NCBI RefSeq assembly: GCF_006345805.1
Contig: NW_021825404.1
Location: 1 to 15,645, forward strand
DNA: 15,645 nt
Source: Octopus sinensis
Lineage: Eukaryota
Direction: 5' to 3'
Shown: positions 1,132 through 15,449 of the stretch, in pieces
Position numbering within the stretch: the stretch's first letter is position 1
How the letters are laid out: every line of letters starts with the position of its first letter
Position numbers and translations under genes: made by a program
Notes under the pieces: model-generated
The model's database searches: none
The model's input: the letters and a program-made list of their open reading frames with translations, nothing else
Told to the model about the DNA's origin: nothing

Positions 1132-1712
1132 GAAGGTGGCGAGCTGGCAGAGTCGTTAGCACGCTGGGCGAAATGCTTAGCCGTATTTCGTCTGCCGCTA
1201 CGTTCTGAGTTCAAATTCCGCCGAGGTCGACTTTGCCTTTCATCCTTTGGGGGTCGATTAAATAAGTACCAGCTATGCACTGGGGTCAATGTAATCGACT
1301 TAATCCGTTTGACTGTCCTTGTTTGTCCCCTGTGTGTTTAGCCCCTTGTGGGTAGCAAAGAAATATGTATTTCGTCTGCTGCCACATTCTGAGTTCAAAT
1401 TCCGCCGAGGTCGACTTTGCTTTTCATCCTTCCGGGGTCGATTAAATAAGTACCTGTTACGCACTGGGGTCGATATAATCGACTTAACCCGTTTGTCTGT
1501 CCTTGTTTGTCCTCTCCGTGTTTAGCCCGTTGTGGGTAGTAAAGAAATAGGTATTTCGTCTGCTGTCACATTCTGAGTTCAAATTCCGCCGAGGTCGACT
1601 TTGCCTTTCATCGTTTCGGGGTCGATAAAATAAGTATCAGTCGAGCACTGGGTCGAGGTTATCGACTTACACCCTCCCAAATGTTGCTGGCTTCGTGTTA
1701 AAATATGAAACC
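1132..1712 (+). mobile_element. SINE family A: tRNA-like head plus 184-bp internal tandem array (2 full units and a terminal unit)
   Basis: A-box-like TGGCAGAGTCG and B-box-like GAGTTCAAATTCC. GTATTTCGTCTG recurs at 1183, 1367 and 1551 (period 184), with high identity between units. Confidence 0.92.
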
Positions 1713-3362: not shown

Positions 3363-3757
3363 TTTTATTCTTTTTTTATTCTTTTACTTGTTTTAGTCAT
3401 TTGACTGTGGCCATGCTGGAGCACTATCTTTTGTCGAACAAATCGACCCCAGAACATATTTTTTGTAAGCCTAGTACTTATTCTATCAGTCTCTTTGCCG
3501 AACCTCTAAGTTACGGGAACGTAAAAACACCAGCATCGGTTGTCATGCGATGATGGTGGTGATGGTGGTGGGGCAAACACAGACACACAAACATACACAC
3601 ACACATATATACACATATATACATATATACGACGGGCTTCTTTTAGTTTCCGTCAACCAAATCCACTCACAAGGCTTTGGTTGGCCCGAGCCTAAAAGAG
3701 AAGACACATGTCCAAGGTGCCACGCAGTGGGATTGAGCCCGGAACCATGTGGTTGGT
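3363..3757 (-). mobile_element. SINE family B, lacking about 40 nt of the head
   Basis: Colinear with the reverse complement of 7689-8118, from the TTCTTTTACTTG tail to GGAACCATGTGGTTGGTA. Confidence 0.92.
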
Positions 3758-3855
3758 AGATAGATAAGATTTACTTGGAAATGGATGCGTGGCGTTCGAT
3801 CATATAATAATATAAATAGTTTATATATATGCATATACACACATTGCCCATACAT

Positions 3856-4022
3856 TCGAAACGCGGTGTAGATAAAACAGGGGACAGCTAATGAAGGGAA
3901 TGTTCTTTATGTTGCTTGTCAGATTTCTCTATTTGTTTCTTTCGTTGGTTTTCCATGCTTTTGTTTTTTATATTCTTGTTTCTCAATTTGTTCGCGTTCT
4001 TTTGACGTCCTGTACCCATATA
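3856..4022. repeat. Unclassified interspersed repeat fragment, possibly Penelope-like terminal sequence
   Basis: CGAAACGCG motif, then a T-rich stretch ending TTTGACGTCCTGTACCCATATATG. Resembles a repeat I recall from cephalopod DNA; no second copy in the window to confirm. Confidence 0.3.
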
Positions 4023-4208
4023 TGCATGTATATATACATATATATGTAGGCATGTACATGTATGTGTGTATATATGCATATATATATATATATATATATA
4101 TATAATGATAAATCTCAGAGCGAGTTATAAACAGTAGCGGCAACACATCGTGACTTATATTTGCCATTTGAATTTTTTTAGTCATCCTTCCCGTCTTAGT
4201 CATCCTTC

Positions 4209-4241
4209 CCGATGATAGGTCAATACCTTGAAACTCGAGTC
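4209..4241 (+). ncRNA. Degenerate hammerhead-like core (helix I missing)
   Basis: CCGAUGA (U4 to C), helix II AGGU-CAAU-ACCU, GAAAC-UCGA-GUC with a GUC triplet. No 5' partner strand for helix I. Confidence 0.45.
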
Positions 4242-4465
4242 CGTGTGTATCATAAGTTGAAGACGGGAAGGATGACTTCCCTTCACAAATACTAATAGGG
4301 CACAGAAAGTGTGTCTATACCCAGCTGGAGGAGGTGTCTTCCTGGGGCTACAAACTACAGTGCATCCACCCTTAGGGGTTAGCCATATTCAAATGGCAAT
4401 TATATTGATCAGTTAGCTGATCGGCTTAAGCGAAGCAGGGTCGTTGTTTATTTTATGGTATATTC

Positions 4466-4513
4466 AGGCCTGCTGATGATTACGTAAGTATGAAATCACT
4501 GTGATACAGGTCT
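4466..4513 (+). ncRNA. Minimal type I hammerhead ribozyme motif
   Basis: Helix I AGGCCUG/CAGGUCU (7 bp, one G.U); exact CUGAUGA at 4473-4479; helix II UAC-GUAA-GUA closed by a U.U mismatch; GAA at 4492-4494; helix III AUCA-CUG-UGAU; NUH triplet AUA with predicted cleavage after 4506. Confidence 0.72.
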
Positions 4514-4642
4514 ATATTTTTTAAATGTCTTTCTTTGAAAATTGCATTCGGTGGGATTAGTAATATTTTTGGTAGAAATGACTGATTGTCCCTCTTGCGT
4601 ATGGCGTGTATGTAGAATGCCTCCTGCATGTATGTATAATGC

Positions 4643-4660
4643 CCTCTATATATAAATATA

Positions 4661-4698
<38 letters not shown>
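4643..4698. repeat. (TA)n microsatellite
   Basis: Direct reading. Confidence 0.95.
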
Positions 4699-4699
<1 letters not shown>

Positions 4700-4769
4700 C
4701 GCGGGCAGTACCATGTAACACTGATGTGTGCGGATCTATATCTACGTCCGAGCGTGGATGTATCTAAAC

Positions 4770-4958
4770 GTATGTGTACGAGTGTGTGTATGTGTATGTG
4801 TGTGTGTGCGGTGTGCGCGCGCGTGTGTGTGTGTATATGTGCATCTGTGCACGAGTGATATGTTTTGGACTAGAATACGTTGCCATATTCGCGGGCACTG
4901 TATGCGTATACATGCAGGTACACATACATACATACATACATACACGCGCACACACACA

Positions 4959-5001
<43 letters not shown>

Positions 5002-5050
5002 GCATGCAGACAGACATTCACACACGCACACACACATACACACACATATA
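4770..5050. repeat. (TG)n/(CG)n tract followed by (CA)n/(TACA)n tract
   Basis: Direct reading; source of the spurious CV- and HT-rich ORFs. Confidence 0.9.
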
Positions 5051-5330
5051 TAGTTTACTTTCCGTACTCCATCAAGTGAGAGATAAATATTATTTTATGC
5101 ACACAGTATACAGTTAATAGCTAATAATAGTTTCATGCGTTGGAGATGTAGTCTCGACAAGTTTTAATAACACACCTTGTGTCTACAGGCTCTAAATGCA
5201 TGGCTTATACAATTCAAAAATACATATAAACATATATGTGTATGTATGTATGTATGCATGTATGTATGTATGTTTGTATGCACGCGCATATTTGAATGTT
5301 ACTAAATAATTATATATCCCAAGCGTTTTC

Positions 5331-5368
5331 CCACCATGTCTGCAGTCCAATGACTGAAACAAGTTAAA

Positions 5369-5370
<2 letters not shown>
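5331..5370 (+). mobile_element. SINE family B 3'-tail remnant
   Basis: CCACCATGTCTGCAGTCCAATGACTGAAACAAGTTAAA vs CCAGCATGGCCGCAGTCAAATGACTGAAACAAGTAAAA at 8049-8086. Confidence 0.75.
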
Positions 5371-5951: not shown

Positions 5952-6345
5952 AGAGCTGCGAGCTGGCAGGATCGCTAGAACACCGGGAGAAATGATTAAC
6001 GGTATTTCGTCTGCCGCTACGTTCTGAGTTCAAATTCCGTCGAGGTCGACTTTGCCTTTCATCTTTTCGGGGTCGATTAAATAAGTACCAGTACACACTG
6101 GGGTCGATATAATCGACTTAATCTGTTTGTCTGTCCTTGTTTCTCCTCTCTTTGTTTATCCCCTTGTGGGTAGTAAAGAAATAAGTATTTCGTCTGCCGC
6201 TACGCTCTGAGTTCAAATTCCGCCGAGGTCGTCTTTGACTTTCGTCTTTTCGGGCTCGATAAATTAAGTACCAGTTGAGTGGTGGGGTCGATGTAATCCA
6301 CTATCCCCATCCTCCAAATTTCAAGCCTTTTGCCTATAATACAAA
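5952..6345 (+). mobile_element. SINE family A: head plus one 183-bp unit plus terminal unit
   Basis: GTATTTCGTCTGCCGCTACG at 6002 and 6185; same architecture as 1132-1712. Confidence 0.92.
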
Positions 6346-7449: not shown

Positions 7450-7534
7450 AAGGCGGCGAGCTGGCAGAAACGTTAGCACGCCGGGCGAAATGCGTAGACG
7501 CATTTCGTCTACTGCTATGTTCTGAGTTCAAATT
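7450..7534 (+). mobile_element. SINE family A, tRNA-like head only
   Basis: AAGGCGGCGAGCTGGCAGAAACGTTAGCACGCCGGGCG...CTGAGTTCAAATT; similarity stops right after the B-box. Confidence 0.9.
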
Positions 7535-7688
7535 TGTTGGTAAGAATTTAATAGTTGAAAAAAATTCTGTATGTTACAGCAATATATTCGACCTTCTCTC
7601 ATCCACTGTTACAGAGCATCGACATAGAACTGAGGAAATTCTGAAGTATCGTGCTGTATTGTTAGTAAAATATACTATATACGATGTA

Positions 7689-8118
7689 GGCGCAGGAGTA
7701 GCTGTGTGGTAAGTAGCTTGTTAACCAACCATATGGTTCCGGGTTCAGTCCCACTGCGTGGCATCTTGGGCAAGTGTCTTCTGCTATAGCCCCGGGCCGA
7801 CCAATGCCTTGTGAGTGGATTTGGTAGACGGAAACTGAAAGCAGCCTGTCGTGTATATGTATATATATATATATATGTGTGTGTGTGTTTGTGTGTCGGT
7901 GTTTGTCCCCCTAGCATTGCTTGACAACCGATGCTGGTGTGTTTACGTTGCCGTCACTTAGCGGTTCGGCAAAAGAGACCGATAGAATAAGTACTGGGCT
8001 TACAAAGAATAAGTCCCGGGGTCGATTTGCTCGACTAAAGGCGGTGCTCCAGCATGGCCGCAGTCAAATGACTGAAACAAGTAAAAGAGTAAAGAGTAAG
8101 AGTAAGAGTAAAGAGTAT
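7689..8118 (+). mobile_element. SINE family B, full-length: tRNA-like head, CORE-like segment, internal (TA)(TG) microsatellite, GTA(A)nGA tail
   Basis: A-box-like TAGCTGTGTGG at 7699-7709; B-box-like GGGTTCAGTCCC at 7741-7752; CTTGGGCAAGTGTCTT resembles the CORE-SINE motif CCTTGGGCAAGTCACTT; short repeat tail at 8081-8118; three other long copies in the window. Confidence 0.93.
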
Positions 8119-10429: not shown

Positions 10430-11060
10430 AGGTGAAAGTGAAGACGAGAAGGAGGTGAGGATAAAGAAGGTAGGAGCGTGTACATGAAAGAAGACGTGGA
10501 CGAAGATGTGAAGATGGAGAAAGTGGTTGAGGAAATGATGAAAATGGAAGCACAAAGTAAAGTTGGAGGAAGAAATGAAAGCAAATGTAGAGGAAAACAA
10601 CGTAGTTGTGAAAGAAGAGACGGAAGCGGAGGAGGTGACTGTAGGTGAAGGGACAGTTAAAGGTGTTGGTAGATGTGAAAGTGAAAGTAGAGGAGGAAGT
10701 GGAGTTGAAAGAATGAGTAAAAACAGAGGAAGCAGTGGAGTTGGAGGAAGAAGTGAATGCGGAAATGGGGAGTAACAGATGAAGTTGGGAAACGTAGAGA
10801 TAAAAGGTAGAGGTAAAAGGTGAACATGGAGGAAAAAGGTGAACGTGGACGCGGAGGAAAAAGAACTAGCGAACGTGGAGGAATAGGTGAATGTGGAGGA
10901 AGGTGTAGATTTGACGGAAAGAGGCAAAGTTGTAAGTGAAGGCAGTGTCGTTGGACGGAGAAACAAAGGTGCGGAAGAGGAGGTGGGTGGAAGAAAAGTT
11001 GGCGTTGGGAAATGGTGGAAACAATAAATAAAGGCAAAGAATAACGCAAGGAGAAAAGAA
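10430..11060. repeat. Purine-rich (G/A) low-complexity tract with recurring GTGGAGGAA / GGTGAA(C/T) motifs
   Basis: Strong strand asymmetry and irregular short motif recurrence. Confidence 0.75.
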
Positions 11061-11172
11061 AAGAAGCTTTAAAAATTAGAAAAAAATGAATAAAAAATGT
11101 AACTAAATGAACAACAACAACAATTACATTAGAATACAGAAAACAAAAAACCGTCAATAATAGTAAAAAAAA

Positions 11173-11246
11173 GTGGGGTGTGTGTGTGTGTGTGTGCAAA
11201 ATAATAATGTTAATAATAACGATAGCAGCAAAAACAACTGCAACAA

Positions 11247-11290
<44 letters not shown>

Positions 11291-11308
11291 ACAACAACAA
11301 CAACAATA

Positions 11309-11349
<41 letters not shown>

Positions 11350-11364
11350 AATAATAATAATAAC

Positions 11365-11397
<33 letters not shown>

Positions 11398-11452
11398 AAT
11401 AATAACAACAACAATAATAATAATAATGATAATAATAATAATAATAATAATG

Positions 11453-11509
<57 letters not shown>

Positions 11510-11731
11510 TAATAACAATAACAACAACAACAACAACAATAATAATAATAATAATAATGATAATAATAATAATAATAATGATGATAATAATAATAATAAT
11601 AACGATAATAATAATAATAATAATGATAATAATAATAATAATAATAATACGATAATAATAATAATAATGATAATAACAACAACAACAATAATAATAATAA
11701 TAATAATAATAACAATAACAACAACAACAAC

Positions 11732-11775
<44 letters not shown>

Positions 11776-11811
11776 TAACAACAACAACAACAACACAACA
11801 ACAACAACAAC

Positions 11812-11844
<33 letters not shown>

Positions 11845-11890
11845 TAATATAATAATAATAATGAAGAAGAACAACAATAACAGCAATAAC
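11173..11890. repeat. (GT)n followed by a compound trinucleotide array of about 690 bp (AAC/AGC/GAT/AAT)
   Basis: Direct reading; source of the poly-N/I/L/Y ORFs. Confidence 0.97.
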
Positions 11891-12181
11891 AAGAAGTGCA
11901 ACAAAGAGGAAGATAAAAACGCCAAAGTAAATTAAATTTAATCCCTAGCAGCTTTAGATGGTCCAACTGCTAACTGTTATATATACGGTCACAGACCATT
12001 AACTATGAAAACAAAAGCGGGCAACTGACATCGTGTCCCTGTTTGCAGCTCTATTAGACTCTTCGTCTCCCGGCATTAGAATTCAATTTGATATGCCTCA
12101 TCACATTTTCGTCGTGAGGACGCGGTGGAGGATGGGATGGGGGAAGGTTCGAGAGTGGGAGAAGATGAAGATGTTGGCTGG

Positions 12182-12182
12182 C

Positions 12183-12215
<33 letters not shown>

Positions 12216-12270
12216 GAGTGGAGAGAAAGCGAGTGAGTGAGTAAGGAGAGCGAGTGAGTGAGTGAGTGAA
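12182..12270. repeat. (GAT)n and (GAGT)n microsatellites
   Basis: Direct reading. Confidence 0.9.
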
Positions 12271-12399
12271 TGTGTGTCGGACTGTTAGGTAACGGAGTGT
12301 TTGTTAGTATTGGTTTTGTTAGATACTGGTGGCGATGCTGGTTGGTTGCTTTTTAGTTGTTTTACTTGGTGTTTGTGTTGCTTGTAGCATCATTGATGC

Positions 12400-13850
12400 T
12401 TTTGGTGGCTTTGGCGGTGATGTCGACGATGGTAGTATTGGCGGCGGCGGCGGCGGTGGTGGCGGCGGCGGCGGCGGTGGTGGTGGTGTTGGTGGTGGTG
12501 GCGGCGGCGGCGGTGGTGGTGGTGGTGGTGTTGGCGGCGGTGGCGGTGGTGGTGATGGTATTTGTAGTATTATCGGTGGAGTGAACTGGACTGGGTTCGG
12601 TGGTTATGATGATGCTATGGTGGCGTTGGTGATTGGAGGAAGCGAGTGATGGTAGCGATGATGGTATTGTTGGTGGTGGTGGCGGCGGTGATAGAACTGG
12701 TGGTGATGGAGGCATTGATGGTGGTGGTGGTGATGGTGTTCTTTATAAGATCGGTGGTATGCGTGTGGTGGTAGTGATAATGATGATGGTGGTGACGGAA
12801 GTATTGGTAGTTGTGGTGGTGGTGGTTGTGGCAGTGGTGTTGGTGGTGGTAGTTGTGGTGGTGGTGGTTGTGGCAGTGGTGGTGGTGGTGGTGGCAGTGG
12901 TGGTAGTTGTGGTGTTATTGTGTGGTGGTGGTTGTGGCAGTGGTGGTGGTGGTGGTGGAAGTTGGTAGTGGGGTGGTAGTTGTGGTGTGGGTGTTTGGGC
13001 AGTGGTGTTGTGGTGGTAGTTGTGGTGGTGGTGGTTGTGGCAGTGGTGGTGGTGGTGGTGGCAGTGGTGGTAGTTGTGGTGGTAGTTGTGGTGGTGGTGG
13101 TTGTGGCAGTGGTGGTGGTGGTGGTGGCAGTGGTGGTAGTTGTGGTGGTAGTTGTGGTGGTGGTGGTTGTGGCAGTGGTGGTGGTGGTGGTGGCAGTGGT
13201 GGTAGTTGTGGTGGTGGTGGTTGTGGCAGTGGTGGTGGTCGTGGCAGTGGTGGAAGTTGTGGTGGTGGTGGTTGTGGCAGTGTTGGTAGTTGTGGCAGTG
13301 GTGGTAGTTGTGGTGGTGGTGGTTGTGGCAGTGGTGGTGGTGGTGGTGGTGGTGGTGGTGGTGTAGTTCTTTATAGAACTGAGGGAGTGAATATGTTGTG
13401 GTAGCGATAATGGTTGTGGTGGTTGTGGTGGTGGCGTTAGTGTTGCTTGTAGTAATGGCCTTACTGTTGGTGGTGATGGTAGTAGTGGTGGTAGCGGTGG
13501 TATTGAAAGAGGAGGAAAAGGTGGGCGATGATGGTAGCGGTGGTATAGTTTGAAGTATTGGTTGAGTGGCTGGTGGTAACGATAATGTTGATGGTGGTGG
13601 TGATGATAGCGCTTATGGCGATGAGATACACTAGCGATGTATTGGTGGCCGTGTTGTTCGTAGTATTAGTGGGGTGATGGTAGTGGTATCGACTGTAGTA
13701 ATGGTGAAGTGAGTGGTATTGGTGTAGCATTGGTGACGTAGGTAGTGGTGATGTCGATGGCGATGTTGGGGAAGAAGGCAGAGGTGATGGTAGAGTGGGG
13801 GATGGTGTCGATATTGATGAAGATGATGGCGGTATCACTGGATTAGAGAA
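12400..13850. repeat. Degenerate (GGT/GGC)n array with a 54-66 bp higher-order minisatellite at about 12800-13365
   Basis: TGTGGCAGT recurs at 13036, 13102, 13168 and 13222 (spacing 66, 66, 54). Confidence 0.92.
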
Positions 13851-14404: not shown

Positions 14405-14525
<121 letters not shown>

Positions 14526-15127: not shown

Positions 15128-15449
15128 TACCAACCACATGGTTCTGGGTTCAGTCCCACTACATGGCACCTTGGGCGAGTGTCTTCTTCTATAGCCTCAG
15201 GCCGACCAAAGCCTTGTGAGTGGATTTGGTAGACGGAAACTGAAAGAAGCCCGTCGTATATATGTGTGTATGTGTCAGTGTATATGTTTGTGTGTTTGTG
15301 CTTGTCCCCCACCATCGCTTGACAACCAATGCGAATGAGACCGATAAAATAAGTACTAGGCTTACAAAGAATAAGTCCTGGGGCCCATTTGTTCGACTAA
15401 AGGCTCCAGCATGGCTGCAGTCAAATGACTGAAACAAATAAAAGAAAAT
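15097..15449 (+). mobile_element. SINE family B with small internal deletions
   Basis: Colinear with 7689-8118; about 45 nt missing after GACAACCAATGC. Confidence 0.93.

What the first reader, a model, noticed from the sequence alone, without database searches (positions are those of the whole stretch)
4460..4517. Near-complete minimal type I hammerhead ribozyme in apparently anonymous DNA
Seen in sequence: all hammerhead parts are present in order. Helix I is A4466-G4472 paired with C4507-U4513 (7 bp), possibly extended 4 bp by 4460-4463/4514-4517 across a 2-nt bulge. The core is an exact CUGAUGA, helix II is UAC/GUA capped by GUAA, then GAAA, helix III AUCA/UGAU and cleavage triplet AUA. 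Helix III plus loop is a palindrome (ATCAC-T-GTGAT). Established: minimal type I hammerheads with palindromic helix III occur in Penelope-like elements and non-LTR retrozymes and can cleave as dimers. Inference: the 10.1-11.1 pair is U.U (4480/4491) instead of the usual G-C, so this copy may be a decayed member of a family whose consensus reads CTGATGAG...CGAAA.
Basis: partly seen in the sequence, partly recalled or inferred. Interest (0 to 1): 0.8.

Follow-up and report, generated by a model that had tools for sequence, protein, structure and literature searches.

The report
Lone hammerhead ribozyme motif copy
A 58-base stretch of repeat-rich animal DNA spells out every part of a small self-cutting RNA (a hammerhead ribozyme) far better than chance allows, but it is a single, slightly defective copy with no partner, no parent element nearby and no relatives that I could find, so it is most likely an ordinary leftover of a mobile element.

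Summary
At 4460-4517 (+) there is a 7-bp helix I, an exact CUGAUGA, a helix II of U.U plus UAC/GUA capped by GUAA, then GAAA, a 4-bp helix III and A17, with the cut predicted after 4506. A match this good is expected about 1e-6 times per window and about 0.2 times per 2.5-Gb genome. A much looser descriptor gives 6e-4 per window.

Rfam hammerhead models do not score it. They also miss two genuine Penelope-element hammerheads that I fetched as a control, so this negative says little.

- There is no second copy and no tandem repeat in 15.6 kb.
- There is no RT or GIY-YIG remnant within about 0.9 kb.
- The architecture differs from Penelope minimal hammerheads.

It fits the canonical 6/4-bp type I class better. 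U.U at the base of helix II is native in the axolotl HHR_Amex2 family, so it need not be decay.

No homologues could be retrieved because no animal genome was searchable. Family membership, covariation and activity remain untested. Most likely it is a solitary relic that is weak or inactive alone.

The parts
4460..4463 (+). Optional outer extension of helix I, 5' strand (AUAU), pairing with 4514-4517. It is separated from the main helix by the 2-nt bulge U4464 C4465.
   Evidence: Read directly from the sequence. AT-only, so weak evidence on its own.
4466..4472 (+). Helix I, 5' strand (AGGCCUG). G4472 is position 2.1.
   Evidence: Pairs with 4507-4513 over 7 contiguous bp including one G.U. Helix I is kept in the monomer MFE fold.
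4473..4479 (+). Catalytic core C3 U4 G5 A6 U7 G8 A9 (CUGAUGA).
   Evidence: Exact match. There are only two CTGATGA sites in the window; the other, at 12182, lies inside a (TGA)n microsatellite.
4480..4491 (+). Helix II hairpin: U4480.U4491 at positions 10.1/11.1, then U-A, A-U and C-G (4481-4483/4488-4490), capped by the GNRA-type loop GUAA (4484-4487).
   Evidence: It has the canonical size (4 positions plus a 4-nt loop) but lacks the conserved G10.1-C11.1 pair.
4492..4494 (+). Core G12 A13 A14.
   Evidence: Exact match.
4495..4505 (+). Helix III hairpin: A15.1-U16.1, U-A, C-G, A-U, with loop CUG. ATCACTGTGAT is self-complementary apart from the central T.
   Evidence: In a two-copy cofold this segment forms a 5+5 bp intermolecular helix III.
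4506..4506 (+). A17. The predicted self-cleavage site is the phosphodiester bond between A4506 and C4507 (cleavage triplet AUA).
   Evidence: Position follows from the hammerhead numbering. Cleavage was not tested.
4507..4513 (+). Helix I, 3' strand (CAGGUCU). C4507 is position 1.1.
   Evidence: C1.1-G2.1 is the pair reported as almost invariant in cricket satellite hammerheads (PMC2837043).
4514..4517 (+). Optional outer extension of helix I, 3' strand (AUAU).
4105..4646 (+). A 542-bp non-microsatellite block that carries the motif, bounded by (AT)n at 4018-4104 and (TA)n at 4647-4698. It may be the carrier element; this is inference only.
   Evidence: No other copy of 4100-4650 exists in the window. 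The RNA fold has z = -3.08, mainly from nested inverted repeats 4156-4211/4260-4404. No protein-domain remnant was found.

Best explanation
This is a genuine hammerhead-derived sequence: one solitary genomic copy of a canonical-size type I hammerhead (helix I open, helices II and III capped). It was most likely left by a hammerhead-carrying retroelement of the retrozyme / satellite / Penelope-related world.

If the + strand is transcribed, the RNA would fold round the CUGAUGA...GAAA core and cut itself between A4506 and C4507. That would leave a 2',3'-cyclic phosphate and a 5'-OH (established hammerhead chemistry).

Alone this copy is probably weak or inactive, for three reasons:
- The monomer hammerhead fold is disfavoured.
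- The conserved G10.1-C11.1 pair is replaced by U.U.
- Helix III is short and self-complementary, the design that in related animal hammerheads needs a second copy to form a double hammerhead. No second copy lies within 15.6 kb.

Shown: the motif and its statistical improbability. Inferred: the retroelement origin, the dimer requirement and the low activity.
For: - The complete motif sits at the stated coordinates.
- It is the only hit in the window, with none in 20 Mb of Markov sequence.
- Chance expectation is 1.3e-6 per window and about 0.2 per genome for a match this good. Even a very loose descriptor gives only 6.4e-4 per window.
- Features the descriptor did not ask for also fit natural hammerheads: a GNRA loop closed by C-G on helix II, C1.1-G2.1, U7, and a 6-7 bp / 4-position helix I/II geometry. 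PMC4209133 describes this geometry as canonical for metazoan type I motifs.
- The two-copy cofold MFE (-28.3 kcal/mol) is the double hammerhead with an extended helix III.
- The monomer hammerhead fold is -8.0 against an MFE of -11.1 kcal/mol, about 0.04% of the ensemble.
- Hammerheads number thousands to more than 100,000 per genome in many animals (PMC4209133, PMC7229834). The prior for a real copy in a random window therefore far exceeds the chance rate.
- Solitary status: no second core plus helix II plus GAAA on either strand, no repeat of the flanks, no suitable tandem array.
Against: - No homologous copy could be found, so there is no covariation and no family consensus.
- Searches of metagenome, prokaryotic-genome and viral contigs with two motif patterns gave 0 hits. 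Peptide-space searches over the motif gave nothing meaningful. None of these collections is an animal-genome database, so the negatives are weak.
- Rfam hammerhead models give no hit even on a 78-nt slice.
- The most conserved non-core pair, G10.1-C11.1, is absent.
- No hammerhead or retrozyme family has been reported for cephalopods in the papers searched. The source organism itself is not established.
- Dimer stabilisation is no greater than for shuffled sequences.
Confidence: 0.55

Rival explanations
1. It is a working member of a living, undescribed hammerhead family (retrozyme-like or satellite-like). In this family U.U at the base of helix II is the native state. The RNAs cleave as dimers through the self-complementary helix III, pairing in trans or with copies outside this window.
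For: - Axolotl HHR_Amex2, about 60,000 copies, has a native U.U at the base of helix II. It cleaves weakly as a monomer (22% in 1 h) and efficiently as a dimer (PMC7229834).
- Minizymes with no helix II at all retain activity (PMC544870), so U.U is not a knock-out.
- All 11 invariant core nucleotides are intact.
- The dimer MFE is the double hammerhead.
- The carrier block folds more stably than shuffles, z = -3.08, as retrozyme RNAs do.
Against: - There is a single copy with no tandem partner in 15.6 kb, whereas retrozymes are defined by tandem repeats of 170-400 bp.
- No related sequence was retrieved anywhere.
- The monomer fold is disfavoured.
- Helix II is A/U-rich and only 3 bp.
Confidence: 0.2
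2. It is a chance look-alike: anonymous AT-rich DNA that happens to contain CTGATGA, GAAA and three short local inverted repeats in the right register.
For: - The hammerhead fold is not the MFE, and the stretch is no more stable than shuffles (z = -0.08).
- The key G10.1-C11.1 pair is missing.
- There is no Rfam hit, no relatives, and no element context.
- With a loose descriptor about 110 such sites are expected per 2.7-Gb genome. A pipeline that reads very many windows would therefore meet some.
- Real DNA holds more short palindromes than the random models used.
Against: - At the quality actually observed (7-bp uninterrupted helix I, exact 11-nt core, 3+1 helix II, 4-bp helix III) the expectation is 1.3e-6 per window and about 0.2 per whole genome.
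- There were 0 hits in 20 Mb of Markov sequence, even with stems relaxed to 4/2/2 bp.
- The GNRA loop and the C1.1-G2.1 pair were not required by the descriptor, yet both are present.
Confidence: 0.2
3. It is a fragment of a box C/D snoRNA-like gene. UGAUGA would be box C and the flanking 7-bp helix the terminal stem.
For: Rfam gives a weak sub-threshold match to snoZ7: 14.3 bits against a gathering score of 43, E = 2, on 4470-4509. The match is driven by the UGAUGA box.
Against: - There is no box D (CUGA) next to the 3' strand of the stem; the sequence there is CUGUGAUA.
- Only about 27 nt separate the box from the 3' strand, too short for a guide region.
- The score is far below threshold.
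- The match does not account for GAAA or for helices II and III.
Confidence: 0.02

Closest known systems
Canonical metazoan type I hammerheads of satellite DNA and non-LTR retrozymes (newt satellite 2, axolotl HHR_Amex1/Amex2, Schistosoma, Dolichopoda pDo500, Mytilus and coral retrozymes; PMC7229834, PMC2837043)
   Same: - Type I topology.
- Exact CUGAUGA / GAA / A15.1-U16.1 / H17 core.
- Helix I of about 6-7 bp.
- Helix II of 4 positions with a 4-nt loop.
- Short self-complementary helix III/loop that permits a double hammerhead.
- Low-GC surroundings.
- U.U at the base of helix II, exactly as described for axolotl HHR_Amex2.
   Different: - It is not in a tandem repeat of 170-400 bp; there is a single copy in 15.6 kb.
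- Helix III is longer (4 bp plus a 3-nt loop) than the 1-2 bp plus tetraloop of vertebrate motifs.
- No loop 1/loop 2 tertiary-contact nucleotides can be recognised.
- No sequence relative was retrieved.
Minimal hammerheads of Penelope-like elements (Cervera and de la Pena 2014, PMC4209133)
   Same: - Animal genome, retroelement-rich setting.
- Type I topology with an exact core.
- Palindromic positions around helix III.
- Most copies of these motifs are dispersed singletons from truncated elements.
- Possible dimer action with low intrinsic activity.
   Different: Real examples have an extra nucleotide after A9, G10.1-C11.1, a 6-7 bp G/C-rich helix II, GAAAC|GUC with no helix III hairpin, and a 3-5 bp helix I. 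I read two:
- gecko locus L002: CUGAAGA-U-GCCAGC...GCUGGC-GAAAC-GUC;
- the Poseidon_Ac tail-head junction.

The candidate has none of these features. No RT or GIY-YIG ORF or pseudo-LTR lies nearby.
Rfam Hammerhead_1 (RF00163) and the other Rfam hammerhead models
   Same: Same ribozyme class by core sequence and three-helix junction.
   Different: No match at the gathering score or at E<=10, even on a 78-nt slice. These models also fail on genuine Penelope-element hammerheads.

Membership tests
Hammerhead ribozyme (class definition) | Invariant core: C3 U4 G5 A6 N7 G8 A9, G12 A13 A14, A15.1-U16.1, H17 (not G) | tested here: met
   CUGAUGA at 4473-4479, GAA at 4492-4494, A4495-U4505, A4506.
Hammerhead ribozyme (class definition) | Three helices I, II and III radiating from the core in the correct register | tested here: met
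   Helix I is 7 bp, helix II is 3 bp plus U.U, helix III is 4 bp. It is the only such site in the window. Expectation is 1.3e-6 per window.
Hammerhead ribozyme (class definition) | Highly conserved G10.1-C11.1 pair at the base of helix II | tested here: not met
   U4480.U4491. The pair is not absolute: axolotl HHR_Amex2 has a native U.U (PMC7229834), and minizymes lacking helix II still cleave (PMC544870).
Hammerhead ribozyme (class definition) | Site-specific self-cleavage 3' of position 17 | not testable with these tools
   Needs in vitro transcription of monomer and dimer constructs.
Hammerhead ribozyme (class definition) | Homologous copies that conserve the core and show compensatory changes in the helices | tested here: inconclusive
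   No copy was found in the window. None was found in metagenome, prokaryote-genome or viral contigs or in protein space. No animal genome collection was available to search.
Rfam hammerhead families (RF00163, RF00008, RF02275-RF02277) | Covariance-model score at or above the gathering threshold | tested here: not met
   No hammerhead hit at gathering, nor at E<=10 on 401 nt or 78 nt. Control: two genuine Penelope-element hammerheads in L002 are missed in the same way, so the test has low sensitivity for atypical animal motifs.
Non-LTR retrozyme (Cervera and de la Pena 2020) | Hammerhead embedded in head-to-tail tandem repeats of about 170-400 bp (dimers to multimers) | tested here: not met
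   TRF finds no such array around 4105-4646. Self-BLAST of 4100-4650 finds no second copy. There is only one core plus GAAA site.
Non-LTR retrozyme (Cervera and de la Pena 2020) | Expressed as highly self-paired linear and circular RNAs | not testable with these tools
   The only finding is that the 542-nt block folds with z = -3.08. No expression data are available.
Penelope-like element minimal hammerhead (Cervera and de la Pena 2014) | Located in the pseudo-LTR of an element encoding RT plus GIY-YIG endonuclease (or a truncated remnant of one) | tested here: not met
   No ORF of 80 aa or more with coding character in the window. Pfam on six frames of about 3600-5370 finds no RVT_1 or GIY-YIG. 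A remnant shorter than the pseudo-LTR cannot be excluded.
Penelope-like element minimal hammerhead (Cervera and de la Pena 2014) | Architecture: unpaired nucleotide between A9 and 10.1, G10.1-C11.1, helix II of 6-8 bp, helix I of 4-5 bp, helix III absent or 1-2 bp with palindromic 15.2-16.2 | tested here: not met
   The candidate has U.U, a 3-bp helix II, a 7-bp helix I and a 4-bp helix III hairpin. Compare the real examples and the description in PMC4209133.
Box C/D snoRNA | Box C (RUGAUGA) and box D (CUGA) brought together by a terminal stem, with a guide region between them | tested here: not met
   Only a box-C-like UGAUGA is present. There is no CUGA next to the 3' stem strand. snoZ7 scores 14.3 bits against a gathering score of 43.

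The most novel reading that the evidence does not exclude
This copy is the first sighted member of an undescribed family of canonical-size type I hammerheads in this (probably cephalopod) lineage. In that family U.U at 10.1/11.1 would be native, as in axolotl HHR_Amex2, and the RNAs would self-process as double hammerheads into small linear or circular retrozyme-like RNAs.
Probability: 0.15. Interest if true: 0.45.

Novelty: new member of a known kind. Interest (0 to 1): 0.28.

Why it matters
Hammerhead ribozymes borne by retroelements are already known to be widespread in animal genomes, so one more motif changes little by itself. Three things would make it worthwhile.

- I found no paper reporting a hammerhead or retrozyme family in cephalopods. 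If the source genome holds a family, this copy would be the entry point to it.
- It would be a second, independent lineage, after axolotl Amex2, with U.U in place of the G10.1-C11.1 pair. That bears on how dispensable the pair really is in natural ribozymes. From my own knowledge, not checked here, G10.1 helps bind a divalent metal ion together with the A9 phosphate.
- It is a practical reminder that Rfam hammerhead models miss atypical animal hammerheads. They missed genuine Penelope-element motifs in my control.

If it is only a dead singleton, it is ordinary genomic debris.

Tried and rejected
1. Rfam over the whole window at gathering, over 4300-4700 and over 4450-4527 at E<=10 gave no hammerhead hit. 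The negative is devalued by the control on gecko locus L002.

2. Looking for a second copy in the window gave nothing. I used self-BLAST, a core pattern with one mismatch and a relaxed scan that included the U3-A8 covariant core. The hits at 4535 (+) and 9497 (-) are AT-rich TTGANAA words with poor helices, and I treated them as chance.

3. Looking for a parent element gave nothing: ORF list, Pfam on six frames of about 3600-5370 (one search failed on stop codons), tRNA/SINE head.

4. Finding relatives elsewhere led nowhere.
   - Exact or degenerate motif scans of metagenome, prokaryote-genome and viral contigs found 0.
   - Peptide searches across the motif found nothing usable (one search gave one meaningless 38.8-bit hit).
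   - Exact look-ups of window ORFs were not on record.

5. Reaching host-genome DNA indirectly also failed.
   - A Penelope RT query (Poseidon_Ac, from the PMC11167929 supplement) returned 4581 hits. The 120 listed held no cephalopod.
   - A SINE-peptide query was swamped by low-complexity words and gave only two UniParc proteins with no genomic record. This was my own design error and it used the last protein search.

6. The Tenebrio Penelope locus L001, fetched as a positive control, held no hammerhead core. It was replaced by gecko L002.

7. Dimer stabilisation as a test: ddG of -7.7 kcal/mol is no better than shuffles, so only the shape of the dimer MFE, not its energy, is informative.

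8. The flanking (TA)n tracts as a sign of Penelope-type insertion: rejected as evidence. TA-type microsatellites are frequent throughout this window, and the (TA)n-targeting Naiads lack hammerheads (PMC8557442).

9. The box C/D snoRNA reading was rejected because there is no D box.

Full report
WHAT IS THERE

The window is repeat-rich, AT-rich eukaryotic DNA. TRF reports 43 rows of tandem repeats, mostly microsatellites. There are several SINE-like copies and no convincing ORF. No Rfam family reaches its gathering score.

From memory the SINEs look like octopus SINEs. I could not test this. Their peptides match two UniParc proteins of unknown organism.

At 4460-4517 on the + strand the sequence is ATAT TC AGGCCTG CTGATGA T TAC GTAA GTA T GAA ATCA CTG TGAT A CAGGTCT ATAT.
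- Helix I, 4466-4472/4507-4513: 7 bp, with one G.U.
- A possible AUAU/AUAU extension across a 2-nt bulge.
- An exact C3-A9 core.
- Helix II made of U4480.U4491 plus three pairs, capped by GUAA.
- G12 A13 A14.
- A 4-bp helix III with loop CUG. Read with its loop, it is the quasi-palindrome ATCACTGTGAT.
- A17 at 4506.

IS IT MORE THAN CHANCE?

I wrote a descriptor that accepts anything at least as good as the candidate. It requires an exact core. Positions 10.1/11.1 are left free. Helix II needs 3 further pairs or more, helix III 4 pairs or more, helix I 7 pairs or more, and loops may be 3-10 nt.
- It finds this site and nothing else in the window.
- It finds nothing in 20 Mb of Markov sequence, even with stems relaxed to 4/2/2 bp.
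- Factorised over 300 Mb of random sequence, the expectation is 1.3e-6 per window and about 0.2 per 2.5-Gb genome.

A deliberately loose descriptor gives 6.4e-4 per window and about 110 per 2.7-Gb genome.

So for one window the motif is not chance. Chance becomes a serious rival only if the pipeline has read something like a whole large genome.

Three features that I did not require also fit natural hammerheads: a GNRA loop closed by C-G, C1.1-G2.1, and U7.

Energetically the stretch is unremarkable:
- Monomer z-score is -0.08.
- The hammerhead fold is -8.0 kcal/mol against an MFE of -11.1, about 0.04% of the ensemble. U4-U7 can pair with the 5' strand of helix III instead.

RFAM AND ITS CONTROL

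No hammerhead model matches at gathering. None matches at E<=10 on 401 nt or on 78 nt. The only thing seen is a 14-bit box-C-like match to snoZ7.

To weigh this negative I fetched a gecko Penelope-like locus, L002, using a protein found with the Poseidon_Ac RT. It carries two inverted minimal hammerheads reading CTGAAGA-T-GCCAGC-CACAGCT-GCTGGC-GAAAC-GTC-AGG. Rfam misses them both on the full locus and on a 78-nt slice.

The Rfam negative therefore carries little weight for atypical animal hammerheads.

CONTEXT

The motif is solitary:
- No second core plus helix II plus GAAA on either strand.
- No repeat of 4100-4650 in the window.
- No tandem array of retrozyme size.
- No RT or GIY-YIG remnant in six frames of about 3600-5370.
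- No tRNA-like head.

It lies in a 542-bp non-microsatellite block (4105-4646) between (AT)n and (TA)n tracts. That block folds more stably than shuffles, z = -3.08. This is largely due to nested inverted repeats at 4156-4211/4260-4404, which do not include the hammerhead. TA microsatellites are so common here that the flanks prove nothing.

WHICH KNOWN KIND?

PMC4209133 defines two groups.
- 'Canonical' metazoan type I hammerheads: helix I 6 bp, helix II 4 bp, and a short palindromic helix III that acts in dimers.
- Penelope minimal hammerheads: an extra nucleotide after A9, conserved G10.1-C11.1, helix II of 6-8 bp, helix I of 4-5 bp, and helix III absent or tiny.

The two real Penelope examples I read show exactly the second design, and the candidate shows none of it. 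Its dimensions are those of the canonical satellite/retrozyme class.

Its one 'defect' has a natural precedent. The axolotl HHR_Amex2 family (about 60,000 copies) has a U.U mismatch at the base of helix II. It cleaves weakly as a monomer and well as a dimer (PMC7229834). Engineered minizymes with no helix II at all still cleave (PMC544870).

So U.U lowers the expectation of activity but does not prove decay.

Retrozyme membership itself fails on the defining tandem arrangement.

MECHANISM

If transcribed, two copies could pair through AUCACUGUGAU to give a 5+5 bp helix III. The cofold MFE of two copies is precisely this double hammerhead, with both helices II intact. The energy gain is no better than for shuffled sequences.

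Cleavage would fall between A4506 and C4507. With no partner in cis, a disfavoured monomer fold and no G10.1, I expect this particular copy to be weak or inactive.

RELATIVES

I could not search any animal genome.
- Motif scans of metagenome, prokaryote-genome and viral contigs found nothing.
- Peptide-space searches across the motif found nothing usable.
- Attempts to reach host-genome DNA through Penelope RT or SINE-derived proteins failed.

Family membership, covariation and the ancestral state of 4480/4491 remain untested.

Octopus genomes do carry active Penelope-like elements (PMC13282606). I found no report of hammerheads or retrozymes in cephalopods.

VERDICT

| Reading | Confidence |
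|---|---|
| Solitary, probably weak or dead copy of a retroelement-borne canonical type I hammerhead | 0.55 |
| Working member of an undescribed dimer-acting family with native U.U | 0.2 |
| Chance look-alike | 0.2 |
| snoRNA-like or other | 0.02 |

It is a new member of a known kind and of modest interest, unless a genome-wide search reveals a family.

Noticed in passing
window 4518-4523: A run of six T follows directly after the helix I extension (…CAGGTCTATAT TTTTTT AAA). This would be a Pol III-type stop right behind the ribozyme. It may be coincidence in AT-rich DNA. I saw no convincing A/B box upstream by eye.
   Followed up: no
window 4480-4487: The helix II region TTACGTAA is itself a perfect 8-nt palindrome. 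Both helix II and helix III segments are therefore self-complementary. In a dimer this could give a competing non-catalytic intermolecular duplex. GTAAGT here is also a consensus 5' splice-site word.
   Followed up: no
window 4156-4211 and 4260-4404: There are nested inverted repeats upstream of the motif: 4180-4197/4260-4277 (18 nt, 100%) and 4156-4173/4387-4404 (18 nt, 94%). TTAGTCATCCTTCCCG is also directly duplicated at 4178-4193 and 4196-4211. Together they form a long hairpin that accounts for most of the fold stability of the 4105-4646 block.
   Followed up: partly
window 4535-4578: A TTGAAAA…GAAA string starts 18 nt downstream of the hammerhead. It matches the U3-A8 covariant core described for some Schistosoma Penelope hammerheads, but its helix II is poor. 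I treated it as chance.
   Followed up: partly
window 1183-1674; also 5990-6310 and 7450-7540: A SINE-like unit of 184 bp is repeated 2.7 times in tandem at 88% identity, and further copies lie elsewhere in the window. A second SINE-like family lies at 3627-3761, 7726-7848 and 15131-15259, with a weaker copy at 2294-2389. Its translation matches internal segments of two UniParc proteins (UPI00069597FA, UPI0006955229) at 78-85% identity.
   Followed up: partly
window 10650-13400: There are extreme low-complexity tracts with strong strand skew: (ATA)n of about 172 units at 11348-11862, and a GGT-rich array of about 300 units at 12455-13363 (GC skew up to 0.82). A perfect (AG)57 lies further on at 14408-14522. 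These tracts generate the longest 'ORFs' in the window, which are not genes.
   Followed up: no
L002 4939 (-) and 6617 (+): The gecko Penelope-like locus carries two identical minimal hammerheads in inverted orientation about 1.7 kb apart, flanking the annotated RT fragment. Neither is detected by any Rfam hammerhead model.
   Followed up: yes
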